This document shows positions 26,991-55,221 of a stretch of 64,000 nucleotides of DNA, piece by piece (position 1 is the first letter of the stretch; every line of letters begins with the position of its first letter). The stretch covers positions 1,178,001 to 1,242,000 of the forward strand of contig NC_134482.1 in assembly GCF_964194025.1 (NCBI RefSeq), given 5' to 3'. This stretch comes from Convolutriloba macropyga (Eukaryota). The notes below the pieces were generated by a model. The model was given only the letters and a program-made list of their open reading frames with translations. It had not been told where the DNA came from and made no database searches. A program made the translations under genes and the position numbers.

Positions 26991-27621
26991 GTTAATTAAA
27001 ATAAGAGAAATTTTGACCTTGTCTTTGGAATGAGAATTAAATTCGGGACTAAAAGTAGCAGATTTCAGATCAAAATTTAAAATTTCAAAAGAACTTAGTC
27101 AATAAAAACATTTTAGGCGACTTGACTGACGTTCAATCAGATAACATTTTTTCTGATAACAACAACAGAAAACGAGCATTCATAGGAGACTGGAAATTGC
27201 TGTGCGCATCTTCCTAGGCCATCGGTTATCTAGTTATTAATGTTTTTAATAGTAGTATTAGGGATTTGGCTCTTCGGTGTCGTCGGGCGCGGGGACTATC
27301 TCCCTGTTCTTTTTGCCACTAAATGGAACAATCTCTCAGTCTCATCGACTATAAACATCACAAAATTTGTAAAAGATTCTTTCGACTATAGTTTAGATAA
27401 TCCTCCAACATTTGAGAAGTAACCTCGAAAAATTTTCGATTTGACAAGCCGAGAAGTCAGTCTCTGTTTTGTGTTTATTAACTGACATTTTAGCACGTTT
27501 TTTGGTTAAAAATGGCTCTGCTTGTATTTATTTATACAAATAGGCAAATTCAAGCATCTTTTCTTTCTTCAGTATAAATTACTCTTGTATTGATAAAAAA
27601 TTTATTTTTTTTCAGCTTGCA

Positions 27622-27842
27622 ATGACACAGTTCAACTTGAAGCCTATCTCGTCATTTCTTCAGCCTTTGCGTTCAAAGTATCCGGATACCGATATTCAGT
27701 CAACGAAGTCTGATAACGTAATAGTGCAACCCAAACCTCATGTGTTTGAGCATGATTACGACGAGGTTTCAGTAGTTGCTAGCCAAGATGAACATTCCTA
27801 TTCCCTAATGAATGCAGATAGAAAATTACAAAATGAAATCAA
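27622..27842 (+). CDS. Divergent POU-class transcription factor, coding exon 1
   Basis: Open frame MTQFNLKP...QNEI preceded by acceptor ttttttttcag (27615); donor GTAGGT at 27843 is phase 2, matching exon 2. An additional upstream exon is possible. Confidence 0.7.
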
Positions 27843-28004
27843 GTAGGTTTATTAAAGTTTCTGGTCTTAAGTTTTTAGCGAGGTTGGTCATTTTACTACT
27901 ATAAAGGGGCAAAGTAGATATCAATCTATACAAATGATAATCAGTCTCTCCTTCTCTCCAAATTACGCTAATAGAATGATCTGTCTTAAGCTAATCTTTT
28001 TCAG

Positions 28005-28290
28005 GGCCACTCGGATCCTAAAAAATCTTAGGCCTGTGAAACCTTTGACGGAATTCCAATTAATTACGAGAATTGAAAAGAAGAGTTTCAATCCTAGAGT
28101 CTCAAAACCCAAAATTTATCCTAAAGTGGGTGACGTGTGCAACTTTCAACATGACTATGAAATGGCGAGCTGCTTACAAGAAGTTGAGGTCCAAATTTCA
28201 AGGTTGATGAAGGCAAGAGTCATTCTGAATTTGACACAATCACAATTCAGTGAATATTTGGCCACAAACTACGGAGTTAGTCTTCAACAG
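28005..28290 (+). CDS. Divergent POU-class transcription factor, coding exon 2 (N-half of POU-specific domain)
   Basis: CTAAT branch-like site plus cttttttcag-type acceptor (28004); LQEVEVQISRLMKARVILNLTQSQFSEYLATNYGVSLQQ aligns with POU-S LEELEQFAK.FKQRRIKLGFTQ.DVG.AL..LYG..FSQ; phase-0 donor GTTAGG at 28291. Confidence 0.85.
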
Positions 28291-28647
28291 GTTAGGAATT
28301 TATTTGTGTTTCAAGAGTACTTTTCAATTCAGCTCTATTTGCCGGTGCGTTAGTGCGTTGGCGTCTCTTTGTCCAGGCTTCCATTAGAACCATAGTAAAA
28401 GTTGGGGTGCTCCCTTTGTATTTCATGGATTTATTGCTCGCGAACAAAGTTTGAAGCAGTTATTGCAGTCATTTTCAAATAATTGCTTGTATATTTTTTT
28501 TGCATATGATAACCTTTGTTTTTGACTACTGCGAGAATCGATACAAATATGCATATTGATAATGCAAACACACGTGAATTCTGACAGTAGTCAAAACCAA
28601 AAAGCTGCGAAGAAGGAAATGTCAATTAAAATTAAATTGGTTTTAAA

Positions 28648-28686
28648 GAAAGAACGTTTTCGAACATTGCATTCATCATCAGGTTT
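28648..28686 (-). ncRNA. Minimal hammerhead-ribozyme-like motif (Penelope-associated, degenerate)
   Basis: Minus strand reads AAAC-CUGAUGA-U-GAAU-GCAAU-GUUC-GAAA-ACG-UUC: core boxes, stem II and palindromic AACGUU stem III; sister copies at 30961-30996 (-) and 7668-7705 (+). Confidence 0.55.
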
Positions 28687-30960
28687 ACATCGTCAGGTTT
28701 ACATTAATAGGTTTAGTTTTCACAATCGAAAAAGTTTTACAAAGTATATAAACTTTTCACTGACTCTTTCTATCGAGTTCTACGAATTGAGTTAAAATAA
28801 CAACAAATTTTTGAAATTATTTACAGTTAAAATCACATTTAAAACTTTTCATTTACATTTAATACATAGAAAAATTTCAATTGAAAATCCCGGTTATTTT
28901 GTTTTCAACTCCTGAAAAGGAGCTTTTACTTTCATTCCTAACTCTTGTGTTCCTTAACTTGTTGGGGGTCGACAAAATTCTGAATTAACATGTATCGGCA
29001 TAAATTTTGAATTTCAAAAGTCAAATGTTTTTACATTTGAACTAATACTTCAATGTCAGTTCCCGCCCCAGTTTAAGTTGCGGGTTTTTAGTTGCTGTTT
29101 CGGCTTTTTGATTTGGATTGCTTCTATTGTCATTAGTTTTTCAACCCCGCGACATGCATCGAGAATGTCCCATTCAATAATATGCGCTCTACCACAACAT
29201 TCAACGAGATATTGTCCCACAGTGGAATCTTTTGATGTTTCAAAATTCTAGTGGTAACATGTCAGCTGGTTTGGCCGACATACATGAAATTGCATCCATT
29301 ACTTGTTACTTTATAAACCACATTCGATTTCATATTTTTGTTAAAAGATGATGTTATAGTGGGCAAGCAAGTTCTTATTTTTCTTGTTGTGAAAATGATT
29401 TAATATCACACATTTTTTTTTCAGTGTACTCGCAAACGTTTGAGTGATGATTCCTCTGTATTGCACAAAAAACTTTAGTTTAAGCTCCTTTATGTTGAGA
29501 CTTTTAACTGTTTTGAGATGGTTTTCATTTTTAGGGGGTTTTGCTGTAACCTTTTCATTTCTAACTATGTTACCCAACGTCTCGTTAACAATACTGGAAG
29601 ACCACTCAATTAGATTCTGATTTTCAGTCCCCAGATCTCCTGATTTTTCTTAGGGGCTCCACCAAAAGATTGGCGATCACTGGTTGCATTGAAAATCATA
29701 TGTACAGTCCTTTGAATCACAGTTTTCTTATGTTGTAACGTGCACAGCTACTGAAATTTAAGGTTATGCCAGTATAAGTAGATTTCTGATACCAATGACA
29801 GCTAATTTGTCTTTCATCGTTTACGTTTATGTTCAGATCTAGGAACGCCAGGTTTCCATCCGCGTTGGGTGTCTCGAGAGTGAATTTTAAGTTTGTGAAG
29901 CGAATTCGCATACTCAAGTACTTGAGGGTTCACTATAATAGTGAACACTATGTCGTCCACATACCTCTCGAATACTTTTAATTCATGTGTCATCCGTTGT
30001 ACTTTTTTCTGCACAACGGGAACAGATCCATACAATTTCAGTCATGTTTTTATAGTTCGTGTCAGTAATACCTTGGCTTTTTTTCATGAAACCAGTTTTA
30101 CATGATTCGCTCTCGACTCCTTTCCCTCGGAACCTAACAATTCGTTTACAATCAGTGCACATTCCCTTCATGTCAGGAATTTTGTTCTCCCTTCCCTCAT
30201 TTGGTCTCTGCAAGGATTTCTCAAAAGATTTCATCCACAAATTTGCCAGAATTACCGCCAGTGAAGCACCCATGGCTAAACCGTCAGATTGAGTGTAACA
30301 CATTTTTTTACACTTAATGTGAACATTCGTTGCGGCTACTCTCAAAAAGCTCTTCATAGCTGACCTCGGAATCTCAGGACCCTCGTCACTGGAGTACACT
30401 TCTTTAAGCGCAATTTCAATTTTCTCAACCGGTAATTTGGTGTACAAGATTTTAACATGGAGAGATACTGTTGGCTCATCTTCCTCCAGATTGGTAGCCT
30501 CTAAAGCGGCCGTGGTAGCATTTGAGATAGCTACCGGGTATTGACAGAAAGGGCCGAAGCCGAGTACCGTTTTTATATACTTTAGCAAGGCCATAAATCC
30601 TGGCCAGTTGCGATTCAGTTGTCCTGAGCGTGTGATAAATCTTTTTGCTTGTTTCCCTGTTTCATTAGTTGATGCAAACTGCTATTGATGTTTCAGTTTT
30701 TACGGCTAGGTTGGCGCTTTTTCCATTACGAGCCTCAAACTGACTGCATTAATGATTTTATTCAGTTTATCCGAGTATTGAACAGACTACCGCGTGATGG
30801 AGTCAGCTGGCTACTAAAATATGAATCATCTTGTCTGTAACCTTTAAGAAAATTGCTATTTTTTTCTTTCGCGCACTTTTAGGGCCCGTTGAAGATCGAA
30901 TTGACAATGGTTAAAGCTGCAGAGAAGGAATTGTCAATTAAAAATTGAATTGATTTTGAA

Positions 30961-30996
30961 AAACAAACGTTTTTGAACATTGCGTTCGTCAGGTTT
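30961..30996 (-). ncRNA. Degenerate minimal hammerhead-like motif in the second Penelope terminal repeat
   Basis: AAAC-CUGAC-GAAC-GCAAU-GUUC-AAAAACGUUU-GUUU; stem I (AAAC/GUUU) and stem II (GAAC/GUUC) intact, core mutated. Confidence 0.45.
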
Positions 30997-32477
30997 AAAA
31001 GTGATTTCACAATCGAATAAAATTTTTTACAAAGTATATAAACTTTTCATTGACCCTATCTACCGTATTCTACGAAATTAGATAAAATAAAAATTTTTTA
31101 CAGTTAAAATCACATTACAACAATATATTTACATTAATAAATCTTTTTACATAAATACATCAAAAAATTTTTCAAAGTTTTCCGGAATATTTGAAATTCC
31201 CGATTATTTTGTTTTCAATTCCTGAAAAGGAGTTTTTACTTTCATCTGTTGTTTTTCTTTACTTGTTGGGAAAAATCAAAAAGCTTCTCGCAGAGGTTGA
31301 AAGTGGATCATCATATGTGATAAATGTGAAAAAAGATTGACGCATGGTGATTATAGATTTTAAATTGAGAGTTGAAAACATAACTGTCAAGAATTTCTCT
31401 TGGAAAACTGACGATGGGGTAGCTTTGGTTGTAGCTAGCGTGAGCATAGCGAGGCCATCAATACATAGGTGGGGGAGTAGTTGAGTAGTTACAGGGGAGG
31501 GTGGTCAATGACTGCCGTAATTAAAAATTGTCCTTTACAACGCACCATGAAGTGCTGCTTTGCGCAGTAGCTCCGCTGAATCTTGCATTTAGGGCCTATT
31601 TTGACTATAAAATATCTGCTCAGAGACTGAACGTTTATCTCTTTTTCGACGAAAAGTCAAATCACTCAAGCGAGCGACGGAACATTGTAGAAAAAAAACG
31701 CCAATCAAAAATTTTGCAAAAAGATGCACAAGTTACAACTGCCTGAAACTTTGAGAGTAATAAAAAGTTTTACTTTAGTGTTCTGTCTCGTTTTGTTTTC
31801 ATGCATAGTTTTTTTGTTTTAGAAAGCCGCTTTTGTTCGCAACTTGAGCAATGTGACTTTTGAACAAAAAAGGGATAAACTGGTTAATCGCCAGGGAGTT
31901 CAGCATCTGTGTACCTGTCTGGGAGGCTTACTAGGCTCTAAGTGTGCGGTTCGCTAGAGCTAAAGAGCAAGCAGAACTTCAAGCTTTGAAGTGCAACTTT
32001 TAATTTGGTAGGTCCTATTAAGCTTGAGCTAGCATAGTTGCAACCAAAGTGAACTCCTCTCGAGGGCTATTCGATGGATGATTGTAGAATATCTTAAATC
32101 ACTATTTACACTTTAATCTTCTCATTTTCTCTCAAATGTTTTTTTTTCAAATATTTATTGCTATGATTATCTTTTCGTTACTACTGCGCCCGTTATGGAA
32201 GAAATAGAGATGAAGCGGTCAAGCCACGTCATTAAACAAAGTTTTGGGATTTCATTGGATGGATTGCAAAATAGTAACATTTCAAATCTCGCCAGCTATT
32301 TTGAAATTCTGATGGTTTAATTTGAATTGTTGTGTTTTTCAAGTCAGAAATCTGCGAAAATTTTAAAAGAAAGTAGTTTTTACTGTGAATTCTTGTTTTC
32401 CTTTTGTATCGTGCGTCTTCGGAAAATTTTATTTCGTTGCTCAGAAAGTGAGATTTTTTGAATACTTGAATAACTTT

Positions 32478-32890
32478 TAATTGCTCTTGAACGAAGTTCG
32501 TAGCAATTATTGTAAACGTGTGTGTCTTTTTGTTTTTATGCAAATTTTTCGCTTGACGATTTTGCTTTTTTCTTCTAGAACATTCTTTGACTTCTCAAGT
32601 GACTTTTTTACGCTTTTTTCCATCATTTGTGAGCGATCTCTATTGCTCTCACTCCGAAGTAAAGCTTGTTGCTAATATATAATCGGTTGCAATATAGTTA
32701 AAACAAGTGACTCATAGCGCAGTGGGTAGTGCGGGTGCCTAGGGATCGGAAGAGCAATGGTTCGGAATCCCGTTGGGCGCAAATTTTTTTTGCACCCAAA
32801 AAGAAAAATTGTTTAGGCTACAGCTCCTGAATGAAATTGCCTCGCCTGTCGTTCAAGAGCAATTCTTCCGACATTTGTCGATTTATGTTT
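32478..32890 (+). mobile_element. Non-autonomous Helentron-associated element (HINE/DINE-1-like)
   Basis: Perfect 16-bp subterminal inverted repeat AATTGCTCTTGAACGA (32479-32494) / TCGTTCAAGAGCAATT (32849-32864); 5' partial hairpin; 3' hairpin CGACA-TT-TGTCG followed by TTATGTTT; T-rich flanks, no TSD seen. Confidence 0.7.
32707..32791 (+). pseudogene. tRNA-derived / Pol III-type unit inside the HINE
   Basis: A box TAGCGCAGTGG, D-arm GCGC/GTGC, B-box-like GGTTCGGAATCCC, 3' TGGGCGC-A then T8; anticodon stem does not pair. Confidence 0.55.
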
Positions 32891-33104
32891 ATAAATAAAT
32901 GTTTCAATTAGCAGCATGATATAGTAGAAAGCCATTTTTGTCTACAAGAAATTGATACTTTAGAATACCTTTTTCGTGACCTCTTCACTAAAAGTTGCGC
33001 TTGATAGACTTTCACCCCTATTAGACGCTAACTGAAGATTTTGAAATCTGTTGGCGTTTTACAATAGGTTAGAGTAGTACATGGTTAACATCTCTGAAAC
33101 ATAA

Positions 33105-33450
33105 TTTGTAGCAATTGTATAAGTCCTGTGGTCTTTTTTAAATTCGTTTTTTCGCTTGATCGAAATTGCGTTCGACCCTTTTAAACATTTCGTCCCCAAA
33201 AAGGGATAAACAGGTAAAGCCCGTAGGGTTTTAGGTGGCTGAGCAGCTCTTTTAGAGCTGTGTGCCTTAATAGTTTAAGTATGCGATTCACTGAAACTGC
33301 TTGAGACAATTTCACGGCGTGAAGGGCGATTCTTAATCCTGAACCGCCTAATGCTGGTTTCCCTAAGCCCCAGCTGGCTACTATTGAAGCCAACGGCTCG
33401 CCGTCTGCATGAGAGGAATTATCGCGACGTTAGTGGATTATGTTTTGTTT
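33105..33450 (+). mobile_element. Degenerate HINE-like element
   Basis: 5' tttgtagcaattg...ttttcgcttga; 3' cctaagccccagctggcta..ctcgccg..gagaggaatt..ttatgtttt, similar to 35030-35325. Confidence 0.45.
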
Positions 33451-33522
33451 AATAGCCGCGCTCAGCAAGCTATTGCGCTTTTTTACAATTAAAGAATTTA
33501 AACTCCATTGGGACTTCATGAT

Positions 33523-33893
33523 TAATTGCTCTCGTATAGAAGCAATTGTAAACTTGTGTCTTTTTTATGCAAAACTTTCGCTTGACCGTTTTGAATTTTA
33601 CGCCCTTGACTATTGCTTTTCGCGTGATCTCAATCACAATTTCAAGCAGCTGAACTCAGTTGGCTTAATATAATACTAAAATTCAAATGAAAAGTGCCTC
33701 GAAACGGTGCCATTTTTCACTTTAAATCTTAATAGTGGTTTATGTTAAACTCTTTTGTGGTTTTTTGAAGCCCACTATTGAACTTCTTAGTCCCATTTAG
33801 GCTCCCCCTCCGACTGAAGCAGGCTGCAATTGATTAGACTTCCCACTAGTCGTTCGGGAGCAACTCCTCCGACGTTTAGTCGGTTATGTTTTT
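33523..33893 (+). mobile_element. HINE-like element
   Basis: 5' taattgctctcg..agcaattgtaaac; 3' tcgttcgggagcaa, hairpin ccgac-gttta-gtcgg, then ttatgtttttt. Confidence 0.6.
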
Positions 33894-33894
33894 T

Positions 33895-34215
33895 GAAGTC
33901 AAATTGGAGTGATGATTTTGGTCACGCCGAATCAGAGTGGAGTGAAAAGGCTAGTGGTATTGCGGCGTGAATTTGTTTCGCTCTAACTTCTAAGAGGAGT
34001 GAAAATTGGTGTTTGAACAAAAATTCGCTTTCTCACTAGTGGTTTTTTGTTCACCTGCGGCAGTTTCTTTGAATTTTATCGTTTCGTCAATTTTTCGATC
34101 GGATTGTCTTCTAAACGGTTTTCCCAATCAGATCATAGTCCATTCTAGGTCTAGTTTTTTGTTTGTTAAATGAAAATTCTTCCAATTGTAGGTCAGGACT
34201 CGTACTGCTATGTTC
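33895..34215 (+). repeat. Diverged solo copy of the repeat family that forms module C of the 40-54 kb array
   Basis: Shares gaagtcaaattggagt, tcacgccgaa, ggcgtgaa, ttcgctctaactt, ggtgtttgaacaaaaattcgctttctc, tcaggact..tgctatgtt with the array. Confidence 0.8.
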
Positions 34216-35029
34216 CTTAACTTCGTCGAATAAAATTTTGTTTCGCTTTACCTCGTTTGACGCTTTTCCGACGTGAAATCTTTATGACTTTTTCAGGCTT
34301 TTTCGTTCCTTGCTCATTCTGATCAAAGCACTTGCTAAAAAACGAAATCAAAAGTCGAAACGGGATAAACCCATGAAGCCCAAACAATTTTAGAAGCCCG
34401 CTACTTGAAGTTTGTTCTTTTAAGTTAAGTTACCCTCTCGTTATTGAGACTAACCCCTGTATCCTCTCAATAAGTAGCAGGAGTTTTTCTAACAAAAAAT
34501 GAGATCAAAATGGTTCACACTTTGTAAAAAATCCTTTCATCAATCAATTCTTTCCTTTTTCGGTTCTTTCAGTCCCAATCGGGATTTTATCAATGGCGGC
34601 TATTTCCGTTATCTGCCGCGTATGTTTATTTTGAGAATTCTTAAGTTTTCAAATTGAGTTATTTTGAGGTTTTGATTGATTTTAAATTGGTTTTGATAAC
34701 TCAAATCCTAAAGTTTTCTATTAAAGAGACGACCAGAGGGCATCGGAGGAAGTTTGTTGGGTCTTCTCGTCCGCAATTTTGTGTTTTTATTAATTTTTTT
34801 AATGAGAAAAAGCACTGGAGGCCTTATTATTTTTGGGCAGATAGCTTTTTTTTAGAGTTTTTTTGCCGAAGAACTATTAACTAATGAAAGACTTAATTAG
34901 CATTGTAGTCAAAGTTTAATCTGTTTTGATGTTTTTTGTGTTCAGTAACAGCTGGATACATTTAGTTTTGCCGTGATTTTGATTCGGTGTCATGCGTCCA
35001 GTTTTTGAGGAACGAGAATTTGAGTTTTA

Positions 35030-35325
35030 TTAATTGCTCTCAAAGGAAGTTTGTAGCAATTATATTAGTTATATGGTCTTTTTTATGCGATTTATTGCTT
35101 GACCGATTTTTGTCGGACTCTTTTGACTTTTCGTTTTCAAAAACGGGATACGCCCCCCTCGTCCAGCGCTCCCAAAACCTTACACCCACCCTATCACTTG
35201 ACGCCTCCCCCCGCACTCACATCACACTCACTTGATGCATCTCTAGGCCCCAGTTGGCTACAACCGATACCTACTGCTCGCCGGTCGTTTGAGAGTAATT
35301 CGACCGATATCGACTGTTTTTATTA
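35030..35325 (+). mobile_element. HINE-like element
   Basis: 5' taattgctctcaaagg..tagcaatt; 3' tcgtttgagagtaatt followed by a hairpin-like segment and T-run. Confidence 0.55.
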
Positions 35326-35799
35326 GTTTTCGTTTTTAGTGTGTAGATTGATAACGTTCAAGTCAGCGTTAACCACTAGCCAATTCTACAGTCAGCAGGA
35401 TATATTTTTGCCTTTCGTGTTGGTCTTTTTTGCAATTTGTAATACTTTTAGCAACATTCTCTCACTAGACGAGAAAGAATGTTTCTGTACTTATTGTTGA
35501 AAGAAGGATGGTTGACATTTGATGTGATCAAATCATTGTCGATTTAGTTTCCGCATCCTGAAGTAGCAAGGCGATTGCGGTTCATTCTATTACTATCAGT
35601 AAATAATTCTGACAGTAGTCATGTCTAAAAGGGAGTAGATTAAAAAAAATCGATGAGTTAACTAACGGATATTCAATTAACTTCAATTTGCTAAGAATGG
35701 TTTTGTTTTATCCGAATTTTTTCTCCTTCCTGTACCTTAAATTTATAATACAGACCTACCTTATAAAATTAGTGATTATAATTCAGATTTGCATTTTAG

Positions 35800-36231
35800 A
35801 ACGATATTTCAAAACTAGAGAAGAGAGACCTGAGTTTGAAAAAAGCACAGTCTCAATTGAAAATGCTAGGGCAGTTATTTCACGATCTGAAGGATACGGA
35901 CTGGAGCAGCATTGCGATAGAGCCAATTCCCGAATTAACAAGAAAACGAACTGTTTACCCGTCCCATTATTTGGAGCTTTTTAACGAGTTGTTTGAAATC
36001 AACGCTTACCCACACAGAATCGAATTGCATTTTCTTTCCCGGTTCGTTTTAACCGACCGCGAGAGACTACGTGAGTGGTTTTCGGCAAAACGTATGAAGA
36101 TGGGCAAGAAAAGCCGTTTGAACTTGAAGAAAGGCAACTTCGATTTATGGAAAGAAGCTGTTTACAAATGGGACAAAAAGTGGAACAAAATCGAGCCAAT
36201 CATCGAAGAAGTTTTAGAAGGAACAATTTAA
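35800..36231 (+). CDS. Divergent POU-class transcription factor, coding exon 3 (C-half of POU-S, linker, homeodomain)
   Basis: Acceptor gcattttag (35799), phase 0; NDISKLEKRDLSLKKAQSQLKML resembles POU6-type SAICRFEKLDITPKSAQKLKPVL; ungapped homeodomain 35935-36114 with R5, L13, F20, Y25, P26, L34, W48, F49, R53; AATAAA at 36582. Confidence 0.9.
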   Translation, partial: NDISKLEKRDLSLKKAQSQLKMLGQLFHDLKDTDWSSIAIEPIPELTRKRTVYPSHYLELFNELFEINAYPHRIELHFLSRFVLTDRERLREWFSAKRMKMGKKSRLNLKKGNFDLWKEAVYKWDKKWNKIEPIIEEVLEGTI

Positions 36232-36645
36232 CTCGTTCGTAACGAATTAGACGATAGGAGAAATAGTCTTGACTGCATCAATGTGCAGAAAAGTTTTACT
36301 CGTCAAACGAGTTTTGGCGATAGTTTGCGTTAAGATATGCAAGTGCGACTATTTTTGTGATTTGCGCATTTGTTCAATTTTCCAACAGCTTTAACTAGTG
36401 ACGTTTCCGTTGGAATCGTAAATAATTTCAGTTAAACAACTTCAGCATTCGAATCTAATGAAGATGTTGCTTTTACCGCAACGGCGCAACTTGACAAAAC
36501 TCTTTTACTTGTAGAAAAATTGTATTAAATTACCATAACTAATTATGCTAACTTTACCTTTCACGCTACGAAGAATTCAATAATAAAGCTATATGTACAA
36601 TTTGTTGATATTTACATTTTATCTAATTAGGGTTGTATGCATTTT

Positions 36646-36965
36646 TCAGGAGAGCGTTGGATTGTACGTAATTCCTGTTGGCAAGTAAATGACACTGTGG
36701 GTATTGCATCCTTGAATTGGGATTTTAGTCCACTGTGTTTTGCAAATGTCATTTGGTTTCTCGTCTTTCCTTATTTTCAAAGTGACATTTGTGATTGCTT
36801 TGAATCCGTAGTCGTCTCCGAGTTTGGTAATCGGAAAGCTATAATATTCGCCTGTGCATTCTGCGGACACGTTTTTTTGGTTAAATTGAATGTGATCGGC
36901 TCTTAGTTTGGCTTCGCTGTTGTATCTGCGAATGAGTTCCTTCGCAGCTTCTAAGTGATTGTTTT
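36646..36965 (-). CDS. Secreted Cys-containing protein A (unknown family), coding exon 2
   Basis: Acceptor tttttttcag, phase 1 matching exon 1; ENNHLEAAKELIRRY...SAECTGEYYSFPITKLGD...DICKTQWTKIPIQGCNTHSVIYLPTGITYNPTLS*; homologous to protein B. Confidence 0.85.
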
Positions 36966-36985
36966 CTGAAAAAAATACACGTTAA

Positions 36986-37144
36986 TAGTAATGTGCATAT
37001 GGGCTTACAGGGGCAGGGGAGGCCCTGTAAATTTTTGAATTTTTTAACAAATGATTGATTATACTGTGAATAAATTTTAGAAATTTTAGAAATTATACGT
37101 CTCCCCTCCCCTGGACCTGTAACCCGCCCATATACACATTACTG
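36986..37144. mobile_element. 159-bp MITE with TTAA target duplication
   Basis: TIRs tagtaatgtgcatatggg / cccatatacacattactg, flanked by TTAA on both sides (36982-36985, 37145-37148). Confidence 0.75.
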
Positions 37145-38228
37145 TTAATTACCGATTTAATTAAATCGAGTGGATGGTAATTGGTCCTTGCATTAAATTC
37201 TCGATTACTGCAACTCGGGTTTCACAAGGCTTAAAAACTTTTGATCGACATCGAAAGGAATGAGTTTCAGAAGAGTCAGAAAAAGACATTGCACACAAAT
37301 TATCAACAGGATTCAACCACAATATCTGCTGTTTTCTTCTGAGAGCATATGTAAATCGTGAAATTATCATCACGTTTAATGCATAGGTTTAAAAAATTAT
37401 TATGCAAAAGCTTTTAATTGATCAGTTTTAGCGCTTATTATGTTCTATTCAATTGGTTGTGATAAAATCATCTCTATAAAAATGCTAAAAGCTGATTATT
37501 TTAGAACTAAAATAAATTTGTTTTCAATGTATTGTTAATTAAAGTTATCAGAAAAAATCGAGATTAGTTGGAGATGTGGTGCAGTCTAATTACCATTGCT
37601 GTCTTAAAGATGGGCCTCGCTGAAATGAGGCAATGAAACACCCCACTGAAATGAGACTTTGAATTTGAGAATTTTTAAACCTGCTTAATTGAACTATTAC
37701 AAAAGAAATTATCTGAAAAGAAAGTAGTAGACATTTTTGGAATCCAGCTAATATTTTGTATGCAATGTTATTTTCAACTCTTTCGGAGTACTCATTCCTT
37801 TCGATGTCGATCAAATTTTTTTAAGCTTTGCTGGGCCCTAGTCGCAGTAATTGAGTATTTTGGGCTCGGACAGACCAAAAGGCTTAATTTGATTTAATTC
37901 ATAAGCACACAAACGTTGTCAATCTAACAAGCCTTTTTTGTCTGCGCGTCAATGGCATCAATTTTTTCTCAGACAACTAGCACACCTTAACAATTAACTG
38001 AGACAAAAATCAACACTGAAATTAAAATTTGGGATTATATGTTGAAACGTAACTAAGCAAGTGAGTTGAATTGATTTAACCAACAAGTGAATTGTTCAAG
38101 CAAATGAGATGTTTTGGCAACATGATTGGGTTAGAGCCGGCATCAACCTTTTGTGTGGCGATAGCCATTTTCCTAGCCCGATATTGAATGTTAGGTATGG
38201 TTTAGGCAATCAATTTATATTTACTCAC

Positions 38229-38409
38229 CCTTGTTGTATCTTTCCCACAATGTGTTAGCCAGTTCCTTCAATGGGGCTGTGCAGTTGTTGCCTGTATTAA
38301 CGACCTGAACGACAGGAACTGCAAAGCAAACACTGAGCAGCCACGATAGCATTACAACCATCAAGTTGAGGTTGCAAATGGGCAACCTGACCAAGTATCC
38401 GAGATCCAT
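38229..38409 (-). CDS. Secreted Cys-containing protein A, coding exon 1 (signal peptide)
   Basis: MDLGYLVRLPICNLNLMVVMLSWLLSVCFA|VPVV..NNCTAPLKELANTLWERYNK; consensus donor GTGAGT at 38228; alternative ATG at 38361. Confidence 0.8.
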
Positions 38410-39424
38410 TGCACGTTTAGATTGTAGAGCGAGTTTCTTCTCCACTGAGATGGTTTCTGGTTATTTTCTGACTGTCGAGTTTTCTTAACAAGACTTCTCA
38501 AGGGGCTGAGTTCTGGTAATTCTCTGACTTCAAGTTATCTTTTGTCAAGATGCTGAGTTCTGGTTTATTTCTGACCGGCGAGTTTCTTTTAGCGAGTATG
38601 TTGAATGTGAGTTTTTGGTGGTTAGATCGATTGAGTAAACGTATTGGAAATTTAGACTGAATCAAGATTAATTTTTTTGAATTTAAATCTTTTAAAAGAT
38701 TCCAACTGAGCTGGGAGTGAACAAAAAAGGTTTATGAGAGATAGTGGGTCTGATCTTTTCTTCATACTTTCGGTCGTCGCCATAATAACGACACTTGAGC
38801 TGAAAATTAACAATATTTTTCAATATACCTTTTAGTACTTACGTTAATACCACTTGCACAACACTTATCAAATAAAATGCTTGTTTTGTTGACTGAAAAG
38901 AGAGAAAGCTGTAAAATTACATCACTTTTGTGTCAAGTATCAGATTACGCACTCTTTTTTGGTCATTGATACAGGCCCCCATGATCTCTATTAGCGAAAT
39001 TAGTCTAACGTGTTGACATTAGCAGTTTTTTTTGCCTTTTGTTGCCATTTTAGGCAAAAGAATTGAGCCGAATTGACATAAGTTTTCGGCTGCAAGATTT
39101 TGCAATGCACGAATTTACAAAGTAAACTCTAGCCGTAAATTAACTATTAGAATAAAATTAATTTAAGGCTTTACCGACAAATTTGACCGAAGACTATTGT
39201 TAGTCCAAATATTTTTTAAAAAAATCAACAAATTTAAGTAAGGCTGTCTTTTTCCTGGAGAAGTGTTCTCAAATTTTTAACGTCTCCGAGAAAGTAATAC
39301 CATAATAAAACCCGATCTCCAAGAATCTCTTCTAAACACGCCGGGAAACCACATCAGCTGAAATAACTAACAGTTTTTGGGTCTTTTCCAATATAGTCCC
39401 CGTTATAGTATATTTATCGTAATT

Positions 39425-39502
39425 GAGAGAGAGAGAGAGGTATGTATTTGTGTGTGTATGTGTGCGTGCGTGTATGTGTGCGTACGCATGTTTGTGTGTG
39501 TG
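39425..39502. repeat. (GA)n/(GT)n compound microsatellite
   Basis: gagagagagagagagg followed by degenerate tgtgtg/tgcgtg. Confidence 0.9.
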
Positions 39503-40077
39503 GCGCGGGGGTGAGGGGCTGTTATGTGAAAGATCCCAATTTTTCGAGAATTGTGGCAATGGCTCGTGAATCCGAAAAAAAGATAGGAAATAAGACGTTA
39601 TGATCTCTGCTGTGATTCATATTACTTAACTTAAAACTTGAGTAGTATTTGTACTGTACTGAATTAGGACTTTCAAATCGACTACTGGTATAATGCTATC
39701 GCTCTCTGTATCAGAGCGAGCAATAACTCAGCTTTTTGAAACTGGGATCCGAATATCGAAAATTTTGGGCGAATAGGCAAAGGTGACTTCAATAGCAAAT
39801 CAAGTTATCTTTTGTCAAGATGCTGAGTTCTGGTTAATGTCTTGATGAACAATTGCTGGAAACCAAAAGCCTAAAAAGAAGAAAACAAATGGTGGATTAA
39901 GGATCCTTAGAAAAAAAAATTGGCCTCGTTTTCGACTCTTTTGGTTTTAATGTATACATAATGAAGTTGATGCTGGCTTAAAGCTCCCAAAGTAAGTTTC
40001 GCTTCGCTCCTCAAACTTAAAAAATAACTAAGACAGTTTTTTGGAAAATTGTATTGGAAGCACACAATCTGAGTAGA

Positions 40078-43000
40078 TTTAACTAAATTTTGGATAAATT
40101 GACGTCATCTAAGCCAGTTTCAGCCTTTTTTGTCCTTATTCTGTAAAAACAGAGGCCGTGAACATATTTATGCAGCCTGAAAAATTTTGAATGTTCGCAG
40201 AATGCTTCCCTCTGAGGGTTCAAAGTTATGTTGACATTTTTTGTCGCGTTTCACTCTTGGTTGCATTTGCATCATGTCAAATATTCTCATTTAAACTCTT
40301 TGTTGGGAAAAAGGCGCCATAAAGGCTAACGTAACGTAAAACTTAATTTTAAAATTATAATGATAAGAATTGCAAAGTTTTGCCAAAATGCGTTTGTGTT
40401 GTATAAAATTTTGAAGTGTTTTTGAGAAAACTATAGGTGTAATGAAAAGCTTCCATCAAAAATATAGGCATGTTTTACTTTTACTTTGAGAAAACTTCTA
40501 GGTCCGAATGTTGGTACTATGTTGGTCCAAATGTTTCGTACTATCAATTTTTTCACTTTGCTGAAATCAGTAAGGTTATGACGATCGTTGAAAAATAAGT
40601 CCATGTAAAGCAGGGTAACAATACGAAGAACTTGAAGTTGAATTAAATGCAATAAATGTCCTAGAGACAAAATTAAGTTCAAAATTTTGTGAATTATCTT
40701 TTGGCATGTCAGTTTGTTTTGTTTGACAGACAAGAAGAACTACTGTATATATTAACAATTATGACGCATTGATGTGCCTGTAGCATAATCAGACAAAAAT
40801 TGTTCAAAATAGATTTGCTTCTGAGATCCCGAATGTGGATTTATTTGTCATTTGTAGATGTTTTGTGGTTTAAGCGATGTTTGTTGTCTTGTTTAATTTA
40901 TTGAAACAGATCTTCCATTAAGGTTTTCAATAAATGTTCGGAAACATTTTTTCGGGTTTTTGTTAACTACTATGTCTAAAGATATAAAAATGGCATTCTT
41001 TTTCTAATTTTTCAAAAAGATTTTTTTGCGCTGTTGGTATTTGTTAATTGATGTGCAATACAATTGATGTGAAATGTACATTTAATTTTGCCCAATGTCT
41101 CTTTAATAGCCGCACAGCAATAGCTGGGGCTATTATTGGCCTTCGCTTGATTTTTTACAATTCAAAGAGTTTTTACAATTCAGAGAATTTGAATTGTATT
41201 GGGGCGCTGTCTTTTTTCTTTTTTTAAAGATCTGTTCACACATTTTCATGATTTTTGTAGTCAAATTGGAGTAGTGATTAATAGCCGCACAGCGCTAGCT
41301 GGGGCTATTATTGGCCTTCTTCCGGTTTTTTATTTCGTCGTCGCGATTTTACGACCATATGACGTCACAACCACTTCAAATCTGCTTTTTGTGCATTCGG
41401 TCACGCAATTTCAACTGAAGTGCGTGTGTGACGTCATTTTTCGCTCTTAGTGGAGCGATTTTTTTGTCCATTTGCGTGATTAACTTTTTGGTCACACTTG
41501 ACTTACCTCACTCTCAAAAATGACTTCCTGACTCTAAAATTGGCTTCTCTTTGCTATAATTCAAAGAGATAAGGTCAAATGAGTGCGTGTCACTCTAAAT
41601 GAAGGTTATTTAAGAGCAGCTAATAGAGGCAGCAAAAATTTATACAGATTTTTAATCAAAATATAACATATCAGCCTTCAATGAAAAGACGAATTTTTTG
41701 GTCAGTCCTTTACCGTTTTTTTGAGATTGCAGATCTACAAAGCTATTGCGGCTATTTTCTGGCAATCTGCCAATTATGTTTTTCGTCACGCCGAAAAAGG
41801 AAATGGAGTGAAAAAGCAATTGGTTTTGAGGCGTGAAATTTTTTCGCTCTAACTTTAGAGTAGAGTGAGAAAACGGTGTTTCAACAAAAATTCGCTTTCT
41901 CGCTAGTGGATTTTTGTTCAGTTTTTTTTCAATTTTTTTGGATAGGATTTTTTAATATGGTTTTCCCCAATCCATTCATAGGTCATTTGAGCCTAGTTTT
42001 TTGTTTGAGCCAAATTTCCATTTCTCTCACACGCGTTTTTCGTTCACACGCGGCATTTTGACATTGATTTTCAGTTTTTTTGTTTTGTTTGATCTGATTT
42101 GTTTAGAAATAGTTTTCCCAATTCAATTATACTCCGTTTTGGGTCTAGCTTTTTGTTTAGTCTATGAAAACTCTTTGAATTGTACATCAGGACTTGTCCT
42201 GCTATGTTTTTTTATTTCGACCGTCATGATTTTTGTTACGACCATATGACGTCACAACCACTTCAAATCTGCTTTTTGTTCATTCATTCATGCAATTTTA
42301 ACCAGAGTGCGTGTGTGACGTTATTTTTTGCTCTCCGTGGAGCGAGTTTTCGTTCATTCGCGTGATTAAATTTTTGGTCACACTTGACTTACCTCACTCT
42401 CAAAATTGACTTCCTGACTCTAAAATTGGCTTCTCTTAACTATAATTCAAAGAGATAAGGTCAAATGGATGTGTGTCACTCTAATTGAAGGCTATTTGAA
42501 AGCAGCTAATAGAGGCATCAAAAATTTATACAGATTTTTAATCAAAATATAACATATCAGCCGTCAATGAAAAGACGAATTTTTTGGTCAGTCTTTTACC
42601 GTTTTTTTGAGATCGCAGATCTACGAAGCTATTGCGGCTATTTTCTGGCAATCTGCCAACTATGTTTTTGATCACGCCGAAACAGGAAATGGAGCGAAGA
42701 AGCAATTGGTTTTGAGGCGTGAAATTTTTTCGCTCTAACTTTAAAGTAGAGTGAGAAAACGGGGTTTGAACAAAAATTCGCTTTCTTGCTAGTGGATTTT
42801 TGTTCACATGCGGCAATTTGACTTTGATTTTCACTGTTTTTTTTTCAATTTTTTTTGATAGGATTTTTTAATATAGTTTTCCCCAATCCATTCATAGGTC
42901 ATTTTAGCCTAGTTTTTTGTTTGAGCCAAATTTCCATTTCTCTCACGCGTTTTTCGTTCACACGCGGCATTTTGACATTGATTTTCAGTTTTTTTGTTTT

Positions 43001-46000
43001 GTTTGATCTGATTTGTTTAGAAATAGTTTTCCCAATTCAGTTATATTCTGTTTTGGGTCTAGCTTTTTGTTTAGTCTATGAAAATTCTTTGAATTGTACA
43101 TCAGGACTTGTCCTGCTATGTTTTTTTATTTCGACCGTCATGATTTTTGTTACGACCATATGACGTCACAACCACTTCAAATCTGCTTTTTGTTCATTCA
43201 TTCATGCAAAATTAACCAGAGTGCGTGTGTGACGTTATTTTTTGCTCTCCGTGGAGCGAGTTTTCGTTCATTCGCGTGATTAAATTATTGGTCACACTTG
43301 ACTTACCTCACTCTCAAAAATGACTTCCTGACTCTAAAATTGGCTTCTCTTAACTATAATTCAAAGAGATAAGGTCAAATGGATGTGTGTCACTCTAAAT
43401 GAAGGCTATTTGAAAGCAGCTAATAGAGGCATCAAAAATTTATACAGATTTTTAATCAAAATATAACATATCAGCCGTCAATGAAAAGACGAATTTTTTG
43501 GTCAGTCTTTTACCGTTTTTTTGAGATCGCAGATCTACGAAGCTATTGCGGCTATTTTCTGGCAATCTGCCAACTATGTTTTTGATCACGCCGAAACAGG
43601 AAATGGAGCGAAGAAGCAATTGGTTTTGAGGCGTGAAATTTTTTCGCTCTAACTTTAAAGTAGAGTGAGAAAACGGGGTTTGAACAAAAATTCGCTTTCT
43701 TGCTAGTGGATTTTTGTTCACATGCGGCAATTTGACTTTGATTTTCACTGTTTTTTTTTTCAATTTTTTTGGATAGGATTTTTTAATATAGTTTTCCCCA
43801 ATCCATTCATAGGTCATTTTAGCCTAGTTTTTTGTTTGAGCCAAATTTCCATTTCTCTCACGCGTTTTTCGTTCACACGCGGCATTTTGGCATTGATTTT
43901 CAGTTTTTTTGTTTTGTTTGATCTGATTTGTTTAGAAATAGTTTTCCCAATTCAGTTATATTCTGTTTTGGGTCTAGCTTTTTGTTTAGTCTATGAAAAT
44001 TCTTTGAATTGTACATCAGGACTTGTCCTGCTATGTTTTTTTATTTCGACCGTCATGATTTTTGTTACGACCATATGACGTCACAACCACTTTTTGTTCA
44101 TTCGTTCATGCAATTTCAACATAAGTGCGTGCGTGACTGCATATTTCGCTCTTAGTGGAGCACGTTGTTTTGTTCATTGTCGTGATTAAATTTTTTTTCA
44201 CACGTGACTTACCTCACTCTCAAAAATATCTTCCTGGCTTTGAAATTGACTTTTTGACTTATTTGACTTATTTACTTTAATTCAAAGAGATAAGGTCAAG
44301 TGAATGTGTCACTTCAAATCTGCTTTTTGTTCATTATTGCTTGCATTTTTAACCAGAGTGCGTGTGTGACGTTATTTTTGCTCTCCATGGAGCGAGTTTT
44401 CGTTCATTCGCGTGATTAAATTTTTGGTCACACTTGACTTACCTCACTCTCAAAAATGACTTCCTGACTCTAAAATTGGCTTCTCTTAACTATAATTCAA
44501 AGAGATAGGGTCAAATGGATGTGTGTCACTCTAAATGAAGGCTATTTGAAATCAGCTAATAGAGGCAGAAAAAACTTATACAGATTTTTTTTATCAAAAT
44601 ATAACATATCAGCCTTCAATGAAAAGACGTTTTTTTGGTCTGTCTTTTACTGTTTTTGTTTGACACTGCAATTCACTTCGTTTAACTAAATTTTGGATTA
44701 ATTGACGTCATCTAAGCCAGTTTCAGCCTTTTTTGTCCTTATTCTGTAAAAACAGAGGCCGTGAACATATTTATGCAGCCTGAAAAATTTTGAATGTTTG
44801 CAGAATGCTTCCCTCTGAGGGTTCAAAGTTATGTTGACATTTTTTGTTGCGTTTCATTCTTGGTTGCATTTGCATCATGTCAAATATTCTCATTTAAACT
44901 CTTTGTTGGGAAAAAGGCGCCATAAAGGCTAACGTAACGTAAAACTTCTTAATTTTAAAATTACAATGATAAGAATTGCAAAGTTTTGCCAAATTGCATT
45001 TGTGTTGTATAAAATTTTGAAGTGTATTTGAGAAAACTATAGGTGTAATGAAAAGCTTCCATCAAAAATATAGGCATGTTTTACTTTTACTTTGAGAAAA
45101 CTTCTAGGTCCGAATGTTGGTACTATGTTGGTCCAAATGTTTCGTACTATCAATTTTTTCACTTTGCTGAAATCAGTAAGGTTATGACGATCGTTGAAAA
45201 ATAAGTCCATGTAAAGCAGGGTAACAATACGAAGAACTTGAAGTTGAATTAAATGCAATAAATGTCCTAGAGACAAAATTAAGTTCAAAATTTTGTGAAT
45301 TATCTTTTGGCATGTCAGTTTGTTTTGTTTGACAGACAAGAAGAACTACTGTATATATTAACAATTATGACGCATTGATGTGCCTGTAGCATAATCAGAC
45401 AAAAATTGTTCAAAATAGATTTGCTTCTGAGATCCCGAATGTGGATTTATTTGTCATTTGTAGATGTTTTGTGGTTTAAGCGATGTTTGTTGTCTTGTTT
45501 AATTTATTGAAACAGATCTTCCATTAAGGTTTTCAATAAATGTTCGGAAACATTTTTTCGGGTTTTTGTTAACTACTATGTCTAAAGATATAAAAATGGC
45601 ATTCTTTTTCTAATTTTTCAAAAAGATTTTTTTGCGCTGTTGGTATTTGTTAATTGATGTGCATTACAATTGATGTGAAATGTACATTTAATTTTGCCCA
45701 ATGTCTCTTTAATAGCCGCACAGCAATAGCTGGGGCTATTATTGGCCTTCGCTTGATTTTTTACAATTCAAAGAGTTTTTACAATTCAGAGAATTTGAAT
45801 TGTATTGGGGCGCTGTCTTTTTTCTTTTTTTAAAGATCTGTTCACACATTTTCATGATTTTTGAAGTCAAATTGGAGTAGTGATTAATAGCCGCACAGCG
45901 CTAGCTGGGGCTATTATTGGTCTTCTTTCGGTTTTTTATTTCGTCGCGATTTTACGACCATATGACGTCACAACCACTTCAAATCTGCTTTTTGTGCATT

Positions 46001-55014: not shown

Positions 55015-55221
55015 TTATTGAGTTCTCGTTGTCTGATTGGCTGAATGTTCTGGTCTAATTTGGACACTAGTTGGGAGATAAATGAGCTCCTGTTCTGATC
55101 CACAGATTTCTACTTCTATCTGTTGCCACACACTCTCGCAAATTGTGGTGTTTTGGGGGATTATAACTGCCACGTTTTTGGACGAGGTCTCTATTTGCAA
55201 ATGATCACCCATTTTGTCAAC
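55015..55221 (-). CDS. Secreted Cys-containing protein B (paralog of A), coding exon 2
   Basis: Acceptor ttgttttag, phase 0; VDKMGDHLQIETSSKNVAVIIPQNTTICESVWQQIEVEICGSEQELIYLPTSVQIRP...*. Confidence 0.85.
   Translation of the reverse strand, partial: VDKMGDHLQIETSSKNVAVIIPQNTTICESVWQQIEVEICGSEQELIYLPTSVQIRPEHSANQTTRTQ

What the first reader, a model, noticed from the sequence alone, without database searches (positions are those of the whole stretch)
35800..36114. DNA-reading residues of both POU subdomains are rewritten while scaffold residues are kept
Seen: homeodomain helix 3 is RLREWFSAKRM instead of the POU-typical VVRVWFCNRRQ (V47E, C50S, N51A, Q54M), while core residues F20, L34, W48, F49 and R53 remain. 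In POU-S the residues equivalent to R20, Q27, Q44 and E51 remain, but SQTTISRFE becomes QQNDISKLE. Established: N51 is nearly invariant and contacts adenine; HOPX is a homeodomain that lacks it and does not bind DNA. Inference: a POU protein with new or lost DNA specificity, possibly a cofactor or dominant-negative regulator of canonical POU factors.
Basis: partly seen in the sequence, partly recalled or inferred. Interest (0 to 1): 0.72.

Follow-up and report, generated by a model that had tools for sequence, protein, structure and literature searches.

The report
Acoel POU6-like gene, degenerate homeodomain
This is a real, selectively maintained POU-class transcription-factor gene of the acoel worm Convolutriloba macropyga, most like class 6, whose homeodomain has lost the almost universal DNA-reading asparagine, a loss shared with the related acoel genes found, so it probably reads DNA differently or only weakly.

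Summary
The window is Convolutriloba macropyga chromosome DNA. The stretch is the last exon of a three-exon gene (27622-27842, 28005-28290, 35800-36231), identical to RefSeq XP_075263090.1, "POU domain, class 6, transcription factor 1-like".

Homeodomain helix 3 reads E47-W-F-S50-A51-K-R-M54. POU-specific helix 3 reads QQNDISKLE.

It is not an assembly error: a second haplotype and independent DNA contigs carry the same residues. It is not a pseudogene: dN/dS between haplotypes is 0.22, with 0 nonsynonymous against 4 synonymous changes in the POU domain.

Orthologues exist in another acoel-like genome, with conserved neighbouring genes and the same intron position. Two spliced marine transcripts also encode it.

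In these orthologues homeodomain positions 47, 50, 51 and 54 all differ (A/T/K at 51). The core, R5 and R53 stay invariant, as do POU-specific R20, Q27, Q44 and E51, with K/R at 49.

So homeodomain base reading looks released from constraint rather than re-fixed, while the POU-specific reading core is kept. No canonical POU6 was found in this genome, so this is probably its POU6 descendant.

Interest is moderate: a new variant of a known kind.

The parts
27622..27842 (+). Exon 1 (start codon to AA|gtaggt donor, phase 2). It encodes residues 1-74, including the near-invariant N-terminal motif LKPISSFLQPLRSK (27637-27678) and the EHDY / EHxY motifs.
   Evidence: Sequence. Identical to RefSeq XP_075263090.1 = P0002. 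Conserved in P0006 and L011.
28005..28290 (+). Exon 2 (ttttcag|G acceptor to CAG|gttagg donor, phase 0). It encodes residues 74-169. The N-terminal half of the POU-specific domain (POU-S positions 1-44, ending at Q44) is at 28159-28290.
   Evidence: The same intron position after Q44 is seen in L011.
28291..35799 (+). Intron 2, 7.5 kb. It splits POU-S helix 3 between Q44 and position 45, and contains a reverse-transcriptase-like ORF on the minus strand (29983-30594) and high-copy repeats. The orthologous intron in L011 is only 128 bp.
35800..35892 (+). Start of exon 3: C-terminal half of the POU-specific domain (positions 45-75; NDISKLEKRDLSLKKAQ...).
35893..35934 (+). Linker between the POU-specific domain and the homeodomain (about 14 residues by this numbering; low pLDDT in the model).
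35935..36114 (+). Homeodomain, positions 1-60. The N-terminal arm has R3, K4 and R5. Helix 3 is at about 36058-36108, with E47 (36073-75), S50 (36082-84), A51 (36085-87) and M54 (36094-96).
   Evidence: Pfam PF00046 25.5 bits. Alignment. The model superposes on the engrailed homeodomain at 1.2-1.6 A.
36139..36183 (+). Conserved C-terminal amphipathic aromatic helix FDLWKEAVYKWDKKW (residues 283-297). It is not part of any known POU or homeodomain structure matched here.
   Evidence: Predicted helix at model residues 164-178, pLDDT about 80-88. Conserved in P0006/P0027 and partly in L011. Not covered by any structural match.
36229..36231 (+). Stop codon TAA. A putative AATAAA signal follows at 36582-36587.

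Best explanation
The stretch is the last exon of the only POU6-like gene found in Convolutriloba macropyga. The gene is functional and fast-evolving, and belongs to a small clade of acoel POU6-derived proteins.

Shown: the gene is intact, spliced at GT-AG sites, present on both haplotypes, under purifying selection, and conserved with its neighbouring genes in another genome. A relative expresses it as spliced mRNA. The protein folds as a POU-specific four-helix domain plus a three-helix homeodomain plus an extra conserved C-terminal helix.

Shown: in every known member the homeodomain lacks N51. The four major-groove reading positions (47, 50, 51, 54) differ in each species. The hydrophobic core, R5 of the N-terminal arm, R46, W48, F49, K/R52 and R53 are kept. 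In the POU-specific domain R20, Q27, Q44, I47, L50 and E51 are kept, with K/R at 49.

Inferred mechanism: sequence reading by homeodomain helix 3 has been released from selection. Any sequence-specific DNA recognition now rests mainly on the POU-specific domain, probably at an altered half-site related to the POU-specific half of the octamer. The still basic homeodomain would then serve as a low-specificity DNA clamp and/or nuclear-localisation and protein-contact module. The conserved N-terminal motif and C-terminal helix would supply partner contacts.
For: Gene model: identical to RefSeq XP_075263090.1; splice sites read directly.

POU class: Pfam Pou 26.1 bits on the whole protein and 30.4 bits on residues 120-215 (cut-off 27). 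Homeodomain 22.4-25.5 bits (cut-off 22.9). One continuous match over both subdomains to POU6F1 (3d1n), E 6e-9. With the clade profile the match is 54.1 bits, against 41.8 for the next POU. The AF2 model has pLDDT 79. The top 40 Foldseek PDB hits are all POU domains. POU-S superposes at 2.2-2.4 A and the homeodomain at 1.2-1.6 A.

No canonical POU6: the PF00157 scan of the whole assembly finds POU3, a POU1/2-like gene, POU4 and a POU3 pseudogene only. No paralogue of this gene was found.

Selection: NG86 dN/dS between the haplotypes is 0.22 (P 0.003). The POU domain has 0 nonsynonymous and 4 synonymous changes (P 0.002). Both alleles sit at about half depth in the same DNA samples.

Orthologues: P0006 and P0027 are marine transcripts. 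P0027 lies on a 1013-nt contig with an uninterrupted ORF. L011 is genomic, with the same exon structure and conserved downstream genes.

Position analysis: 17 of 60 homeodomain positions are invariant (5, 10, 11, 15, 19, 20, 23, 26, 30, 31, 34, 43, 45, 46, 48, 49, 53). At 19 of 60 all three species differ, and these include 47, 50, 51 and 54 (hypergeometric P 0.008). POU-S invariants include 20, 27, 44, 47, 48, 50 and 51. Homeodomain net charge is +6, +5 and +10, against +8 and +12 for this genome's POU3 and POU4.

Literature: DNA-contact residues are largely invariant across POU families, and POU6 is found in every annotated metazoan genome except nematodes. Degenerate PCR in Convolutriloba recovered only POU3 and POU4 (PMC4245813). 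Pou6 was found in only one of three acoel transcriptomes (PMC6125248). Positions 47, 50, 51 and 54 are homeodomain specificity determinants (PMC6258689).
Against: No binding data of any kind exist. Each orthologue has an acidic residue on the homeodomain reading face (E47, D47 or D50), and two of three have one at POU-S position 46 (D/E). This would disfavour DNA contact by either domain.

Conservation of the basic arm could reflect a nuclear-localisation signal rather than minor-groove binding. R20-E51 and Q27-Q44 also have structural roles. P0027 changes POU-S I47 to M and S48 to C, so the POU-S helix is not rigidly fixed.

Only three independent lineages are available. The POU-S Pfam score falls below the cut-off in the orthologues (14.9-17.4 bits).

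The POU6 assignment rests on score margins and a short signature (EK.D...K.AQ), not on a tree. POU6 is the most basal POU family, so long-branch attraction is possible.

No RNA evidence was obtained for C. macropyga itself: the runs found are DNA.
Confidence: 0.55

Rival explanations
1. A POU protein that does not bind DNA and acts as a cofactor or dominant-negative inhibitor. It would work like HOPX, or like what was originally proposed for Drosophila I-POU. Both domains would be kept only as folded protein-interaction modules that titrate canonical POU or Sox partners.
For: N51 is absent in all members (A/T/K). There are acidic residues on the homeodomain reading face (E47, D47, D50) and at POU-S position 46 (D/E). 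The reading positions are unconstrained (P 0.008). The most conserved segments are outside the DNA-binding domain: the N-terminal LKPISSFLQPLRSK motif and the C-terminal aromatic helix. That is what a partner-binding protein would show.
Against: R5, R46, R53, K/R52, Q44, K/R49, R20 and Q27 are conserved. Homeodomain net charge stays at +5 to +10, like the canonical POUs of the same genome. No partner is known. The homodimer prediction gave no answer. If this is the only POU6 gene in the genome, a pure inhibitor role would mean complete loss of the ancestral POU6 function.
Confidence: 0.25
2. The homeodomain still reads bases, but with a new, lineage-specific specificity. The differences at positions 47, 50, 51 and 54 would then reflect diversifying selection on target choice, not relaxation.
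For: All four specificity positions differ between species while their flanks are fixed. The gene as a whole is under purifying selection. In other homeodomains, changes at positions 47, 50 and 54 are known to re-tune specificity (PMC6258689).
Against: No homeodomain known to me binds specifically without N51 (from memory, not tested). Alanine, threonine and lysine at position 51 have nothing in common chemically. Helix 3 is identical between the two C. macropyga haplotypes and between P0006 and P0027, so there is no sign of ongoing rapid change. Three lineages are too few for a site test.
Confidence: 0.1
3. A decaying or neutrally evolving gene copy (pseudogene) whose open frame survives by chance.
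For: It is extremely divergent from all canonical POUs. Pfam scores sit at the cut-offs. A 7.5-kb transposon-filled intron splits the domain. No RNA runs were found for this species.
Against: The ORF and GT-AG splice sites are intact in two haplotypes and in a distant genome. Omega is 0.22, with 0 nonsynonymous and 4 synonymous changes in the domain. Relatives express spliced transcripts. Neighbouring genes are conserved.
Confidence: 0.03
4. Not POU-derived, but a member of another bipartite class that also joins a lambda-repressor-like domain to a homeodomain (HNF1/HMBOX or ONECUT).
For: Language-model features place HNF-1_N and CUT+homeodomain clusters marginally above POU clusters (0.83 against 0.81, all below the reliable range).
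Against: Pfam reports Pou and neither HNF-1_N nor CUT at E up to 10. All sequence hits to two-domain proteins in the PDB are POU. The Foldseek top 40 are POU; ONECUT2 and HNF-1A appear only at E about 1. The alignment to POU3, POU4 and the POU1/2-like protein is ungapped in both subdomains.
Confidence: 0.03

Closest known systems
POU6 family (human POU6F1/Brn-5, POU6F2; Drosophila pdm3)
   Same: The architecture is a POU-specific domain, a short linker and a homeodomain. POU6F1 is the best sequence match of all solved structures (54 bits against at most 42 for other POU classes). The POU-S signature EK.D...K.AQ is shared. It is the only POU6-like gene found in a genome that otherwise lacks POU6.
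   Different: The homeodomain recognition helix is EWFSAKRM, against VWF(C/S)NRRQ. N51, V47 and Q54 are lost and vary between orthologues. R49 is K and F50 is L in POU-S. There is a conserved extra C-terminal helix and an N-terminal motif. Pfam scores sit at or below the cut-offs.
HOPX (homeodomain-only protein)
   Different: HOPX has no second DNA-binding domain and is reported not to bind DNA. This protein keeps R5, R53, a basic surface and a largely intact POU-specific reading core.
Drosophila I-POU (acj6 isoform)
   Same: A POU-class protein with an altered homeodomain. It was proposed to be unable to bind DNA and to inhibit a canonical POU factor by heterodimerisation (from memory; the name is listed in PMC4245813, table 1).
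   Different: I-POU differs by loss of two basic residues in the N-terminal arm through alternative splicing, and its inhibitory role was later questioned (from memory). Here the arm is intact and the recognition helix is changed, in a separate gene conserved across species.
Canonical POU3, POU4 and POU1/2-like genes of the same genome (L001, L003, L002)
   Same: Same domain lengths and an ungapped alignment; shared core residues, R5, W48, F49, R53, R20, Q27, Q44 and E51.
   Different: Where helix 3 was recovered (POU3 and POU4) they keep V47, C50, N51 and Q54, and all three keep SQ(T/S)T(I/V)(C/S)RFE. They score 108-135 bits on Pfam Pou, against 26 bits here.

Membership tests
POU class homeobox | A POU-specific domain (PF00157) N-terminal to the homeodomain | tested here: met
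   26.1 bits on the whole protein (cut-off 27) and 30.4 bits on residues 120-215. The match is marginal. Orthologues score only 14.9-17.4 bits. The clade profile aligns over both subdomains to POU6F1 at E 1.4e-13.
POU class homeobox | A homeodomain (PF00046) joined to it by a short flexible linker | tested here: met
   22.4-25.5 bits (cut-off 22.9) here and 30.8-40.7 bits in the orthologues. The linker is about 14-20 residues with low pLDDT.
POU class homeobox | Four-helix POU-S fold plus three-helix homeodomain fold | tested here: met
   AF2 model with pLDDT 79. The Foldseek top 40 are all POU domains. POU-S superposes at 2.2-2.4 A over 73-77 residues and the homeodomain at 1.2-1.6 A over 54-57 residues.
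POU class homeobox | POU homeodomain recognition-helix signature RVWFCN(R/Q)RQ (V47, C50, N51, Q54) | tested here: not met
   Helix 3 is REWFSAKRM here, RDWFLTRRQ in P0006 and RKWFDKRRL in L011. By fold and architecture this is a POU-class protein, but it fails the class's DNA-reading signature.
POU class homeobox | POU-S DNA-reading core: Q44 and R49 with R20, Q27 and E51 | tested here: met
   R20, Q27, Q44 and E51 are invariant in three lineages. Position 49 is K, K or R. Positions 43, 45 and 46 are changed and variable.
POU class homeobox | Bipartite sequence-specific binding to octamer-type sites | not testable with these tools
   Needs EMSA, SELEX or PBM.
POU6 family | Closer to POU6 than to POU1-5 in sequence | tested here: met
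   POU6F1 scores 39.3 bits against at most 24.5 with the single sequence, and 54.1 against at most 41.8 with the profile. POU4 has no solved structure in that list, but this genome's POU4 is only 19% identical.
POU6 family | Monophyly with POU6 genes in a tree of all POU families | not tested
   No reference POU6 sequences could be brought in by reference. Long-branch attraction to the basal POU6 family is a risk (PMC4245813).
POU6 family | Single POU6 orthologue per invertebrate genome | tested here: met
   The PF00157 scan of the whole 1.18-Gb assembly finds no other POU6-like POU-S domain, and no paralogue of this gene was found.
HOPX-like non-DNA-binding homeodomains | Loss of N51 and of the other DNA-contacting residues, with no DNA binding | tested here: inconclusive
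   N51 is lost in all members. R5, R46, W48, R53 and a net charge of +5 to +10 are kept. Binding itself is not testable here.

The most novel reading that the evidence does not exclude
Acoels of this lineage have converted their only POU6 gene into a protein whose homeodomain no longer reads bases at all. It would be the first POU-class family maintained under selection without N51. It would act either as a reader that uses only the POU-specific domain, or as a non-DNA-binding regulator that works through its conserved N-terminal motif and C-terminal aromatic helix.
Probability: 0.3. Interest if true: 0.6.

Novelty: new variant of a known kind. Interest (0 to 1): 0.45.

Why it matters
POU6 is reported in every annotated animal genome except nematodes, and the DNA-contact residues of POU proteins are among the most invariant in the class (PMC4245813). 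This finding offers a likely reason why POU6 went unrecovered in Convolutriloba by degenerate PCR and turned up in only one of three acoel transcriptomes (PMC4245813, PMC6125248). The gene is present, but its recognition helix is too changed for such methods to find it.

It also provides a natural experiment. One subdomain of a bipartite DNA-binding domain has lost constraint on its reading residues, while the other subdomain keeps its own. That makes the division of labour between the POU-specific domain and the homeodomain directly testable with a few recombinant proteins.

It is not a new kind of system. Highly divergent homeodomains are not unusual in fast-evolving lineages.

Tried and rejected
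RNA evidence in this species: the four runs that hold the stretch are DNA. Their contigs run straight through intron 1 and show both haplotypes, so splicing and expression in C. macropyga could not be shown.

Homodimer prediction of residues 120-312: no answer (score 0.00). This is not evidence either way.

Word-indexed protein searches: the full-length protein gave no hit. The clade profile added only exon fragments of sequences already found.

Two metagenome scans for more orthologues found nothing.

P0007, a 2529-aa hit in the representative search, is a repeat artefact (PSHYL..N..F repeats).

ESM Atlas features were all below the reliable range (0.78-0.83). They were mixed between HNF1, CUT and POU clusters, so I used them only as a rival to test.

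The supplements of PMC6125248 are not held, so I could not see which acoel had Pou6 or whether an 'ambiguous' Symsagittifera homeodomain matches this gene.

A tree with all POU families was not built, because reference sequences could not be brought in by reference.

dN/dS between species was not attempted. Protein identity is 34-48%, so synonymous sites are saturated.

The species behind L011 (ENA ERZ25878734) and behind the marine transcripts could not be identified.

Full report
**What is there.** The assembly is 1,175,981,408 bases, which matches the published Convolutriloba macropyga genome (PMC13650328). The window is G000:C16:1178001-1242000.

The finding lies in the last exon of a three-exon gene on the + strand:
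- Exon 1: 27622-27842.
- Exon 2: 28005-28290.
- Exon 3: 35800-36231.

Both introns have GT-AG boundaries (AA|gtaggt...ttttcag|G and CAG|gttagg...ttttag|AAC). The spliced product of 312 residues is identical to RefSeq XP_075263090.1, named "POU domain, class 6, transcription factor 1-like" (P0002).

The second intron is 7.5 kb. It cuts the recognition helix of the POU-specific domain between Q44 and the next residue, and carries a reverse-transcriptase-like ORF on the other strand.

**Check of the observation.** Translation of 35800-36231 and an ungapped alignment to this genome's own POU3 and POU4 place the homeodomain at 35935-36114. Helix 3 reads R46 E47 W48 F49 S50 A51 K52 R53 M54. The POU-specific domain reads ...R20...Q27...L-Q43-Q44-N-D-I-S-K49-L-E51, again as described.

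Three corrections apply:
- The "QQ" lies in exon 2, outside the given coordinates.
- The right comparator is POU6. The crystallised POU6F1 chain reads SQSAISRFEKLDITPKSAQ, so T45 and T46 were probably never there.
- The same chain has S at homeodomain position 50. I could not tell whether that is native or engineered.

**The sequence is real and the gene is selected.**
- An ENA contig of 355 kb encodes the identical exon-3 product.
- An independent DNA run holds 98% of the sampled 31-mers of 35800-36600.
- A second ENA contig (L010) differs by about 4-8% in the surrounding non-coding DNA. Logan contigs of four DNA runs show both variants at about half depth in the same samples, so L010 is the other haplotype.

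Between the haplotypes the coding sequence has 17 differences in 939 bases. NG86 gives dS 0.050, dN 0.011 and omega 0.22 (binomial P 0.003). Within the POU domain (residues 133-270) there are four synonymous changes and no nonsynonymous change (P 0.002).

**Relatives.** An exhaustive phmmer search of 1.84 billion representatives with exon 3 found only two true relatives beyond the gene itself.
- P0006 is 325 aa and 48% identical. It comes from a marine metatranscriptome catalogue. A 94%-identical variant, P0027, lies on a 1013-nt JGI contig whose 978-nt ORF is uninterrupted. Since the genomic copies have two introns, that contig is a spliced mRNA.
- P0008 is the last exon of a gene on an 86-kb ENA contig (L011).

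In L011 I found all three exons, with the same phases and the same intron position after Q44. The intron there is 128 bp instead of 7.5 kb. Minus-strand genes downstream of it match window 36670-36786 and 55060-56386, so the neighbouring genes are conserved too. This genome has no paralogue of the gene.

**Class.**
- Pfam gives Pou 26.1 bits (30.4 bits on the excised domain; cut-off 27) and Homeodomain 22.4-25.5 bits (cut-off 22.9).
- The orthologues have stronger homeodomain scores (30.8-40.7 bits) but weaker Pou scores (14.9-17.4 bits).
- Against all PDB sequences the best hit is POU6F1 (3d1n). It is one alignment across both subdomains, at E 6e-9. With a profile of the clade it scores 54.1 bits, against at most 41.8 for POU2, POU3, POU5 and POU1.
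- The POU-S stretch EKRDLSLKKAQ resembles POU6F1's EKLDITPKSAQ, not the [10 protein letters not shown] of the other classes.

An AlphaFold2 model of residues 120-312 has pLDDT 79. It shows the four POU-S helices, a disordered linker, the three homeodomain helices and one further helix.
- The top 40 Foldseek PDB hits are all POU domains.
- POU-S superposes on Oct4 at 2.2-2.4 A.
- The homeodomain superposes on engrailed at 1.2-1.6 A.

A Pfam Pou scan of the whole assembly finds POU3 (C2), a POU1/2-like gene (C3), POU4 (C12) and a broken POU3 copy, but no canonical POU6. POU6 is reported in every annotated animal genome except nematodes. Degenerate PCR in Convolutriloba recovered only POU3 and POU4 (PMC4245813). 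A transcriptome survey found Pou6 in only one of three acoels (PMC6125248). The simplest reading is that this gene is the lineage's POU6 descendant, changed beyond easy recognition. I did not build a tree, so this remains an inference.

**What is kept and what is free.** I compared three lineages: C. macropyga, P0006 and L011.

In the homeodomain, 17 of 60 positions are invariant: 5, 10, 11, 15, 19, 20, 23, 26, 30, 31, 34, 43, 45, 46, 48, 49 and 53. At 19 of 60 positions all three differ. These 19 include all four major-groove reading positions:

| Position | C. macropyga | P0006 | L011 |
|---|---|---|---|
| 47 | E | D | K |
| 50 | S | L | D |
| 51 | A | T | K |
| 54 | M | Q | L |

The chance of all four falling in that class is 0.008. 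This genome's POU3 and POU4 are identical at those positions (V, C, N, Q).

In the POU-specific domain R20, Q27, Q44, I47, S48, L50 and E51 are invariant and position 49 is K, K or R. Positions 43, 45 and 46 vary. P0027 changes I47 to M and S48 to C.

Homeodomain net charge is +6, +5 and +10, against +8 and +12 for POU3 and POU4.

The homeodomain reading face is therefore not rewritten to one new fixed solution. It looks released from constraint, while the fold, the basic arm and the backbone-contact residues stay. The POU-specific reading core is largely retained. That is less than the "both subdomains rewritten" of the title.

**How it most likely works.**
- Shown: a folded, selected, expressed (in a relative) POU-type protein without a canonical homeodomain reading face.
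- Inferred: DNA recognition, if any, is led by the POU-specific domain, probably at an altered half-site. The basic homeodomain would act as a low-specificity clamp, a nuclear-localisation element or a protein-contact module. I give this 0.55.
It has in its favour the acidic residues on both reading faces (E47/D47/D50; D/E at POU-S position 46). Also in its favour, the best conserved segments lie outside the DNA-binding domain: LKPISSFLQPLRSK at the N-terminus and FDLWK.AVYKW..KW after the homeodomain. I give it 0.25.
- Lineage-specific new specificity: 0.10.
- Pseudogene: 0.03.
- Membership of another bipartite class (HNF1 or CUT): 0.03.

**Comparison with known things.** The closest family is POU6. 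HOPX and Drosophila I-POU are functional analogies, recalled from memory. HOPX is a selected homeodomain without N51. I-POU is a POU protein with a crippled homeodomain, proposed and later disputed as an inhibitor.

The gene model is already in RefSeq under an automatic name. I found no description of the lost N51, of the unconstrained reading positions, or of the conserved N- and C-terminal elements. I rate it a new variant of a known kind, of moderate interest.

**What led nowhere.**
- No RNA runs were found for this species.
- The homodimer prediction gave no answer.
- The word-indexed searches and two metagenome scans added no further orthologues.
- The Atlas feature search was below the reliable range.
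- The supplements of PMC6125248 are not held.

Noticed in passing
window 27637-27678 (residues 6-19): The N-terminal motif LKPISSFLQPLRSK is the best conserved stretch of the whole protein. It is identical in P0006 and P0027 and reads LRPISSFLKPLRTS in L011. Two EHDY / EH.Y motifs that follow are also conserved. No Pfam match; function unknown.
   Followed up: partly
window 36139-36183 (residues 283-297): A conserved aromatic amphipathic helix FDLWKEAVYKWDKKW lies after the homeodomain. It is predicted helical at pLDDT about 80-88, and no POU or homeodomain structure in the searches covers it.
   Followed up: partly
window 28291-35799; L011 5463-5590: The intron that splits POU-S helix 3 is 7.5 kb here, with a reverse-transcriptase-like ORF on the minus strand (29983-30594). 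The orthologous locus has only 128 bp. Short stretches at 28428-28474 and 28616-28700 have contig depths in the thousands, so they are high-copy repeats.
   Followed up: partly
window 36670-36786 and 55060-56386 (minus strand); L011 6481-6597 and 11606-11974: Downstream minus-strand coding pieces are conserved in the same order and orientation in the L011 genome. They fall within the stretch that another note calls paralogous small secreted proteins.
   Followed up: partly
window 41326-44260 and 45952-47000; L010 15161-20369: This region matches the other haplotype at several offsets spaced roughly 0.9-1.1 kb apart. That suggests a tandem array whose copy number may differ between haplotypes.
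   Followed up: no
L002 / L005 (G000:C3:55109420 and 55114351): Part of the POU1/2-like gene's POU exon ([23 protein letters not shown]...RRRKRRTCIDVRTKKALEQYYQGK) is present twice, 5 kb apart. This is either a partial tandem duplication or an assembly duplication.
   Followed up: no
L004 / L006 (G000:C3254:37374-37549): An unplaced scaffold holds a degraded copy of the POU3 gene, with an in-frame TAG and changes in the recognition helix (VVHVRFCN). It is probably a pseudogene.
   Followed up: no
window 26470-39800 against L010: The two haplotypes differ by about 4-8% in non-coding DNA, with many indels, and both are present in the same DNA samples. Heterozygosity is very high in this asexually propagating acoel.
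   Followed up: partly
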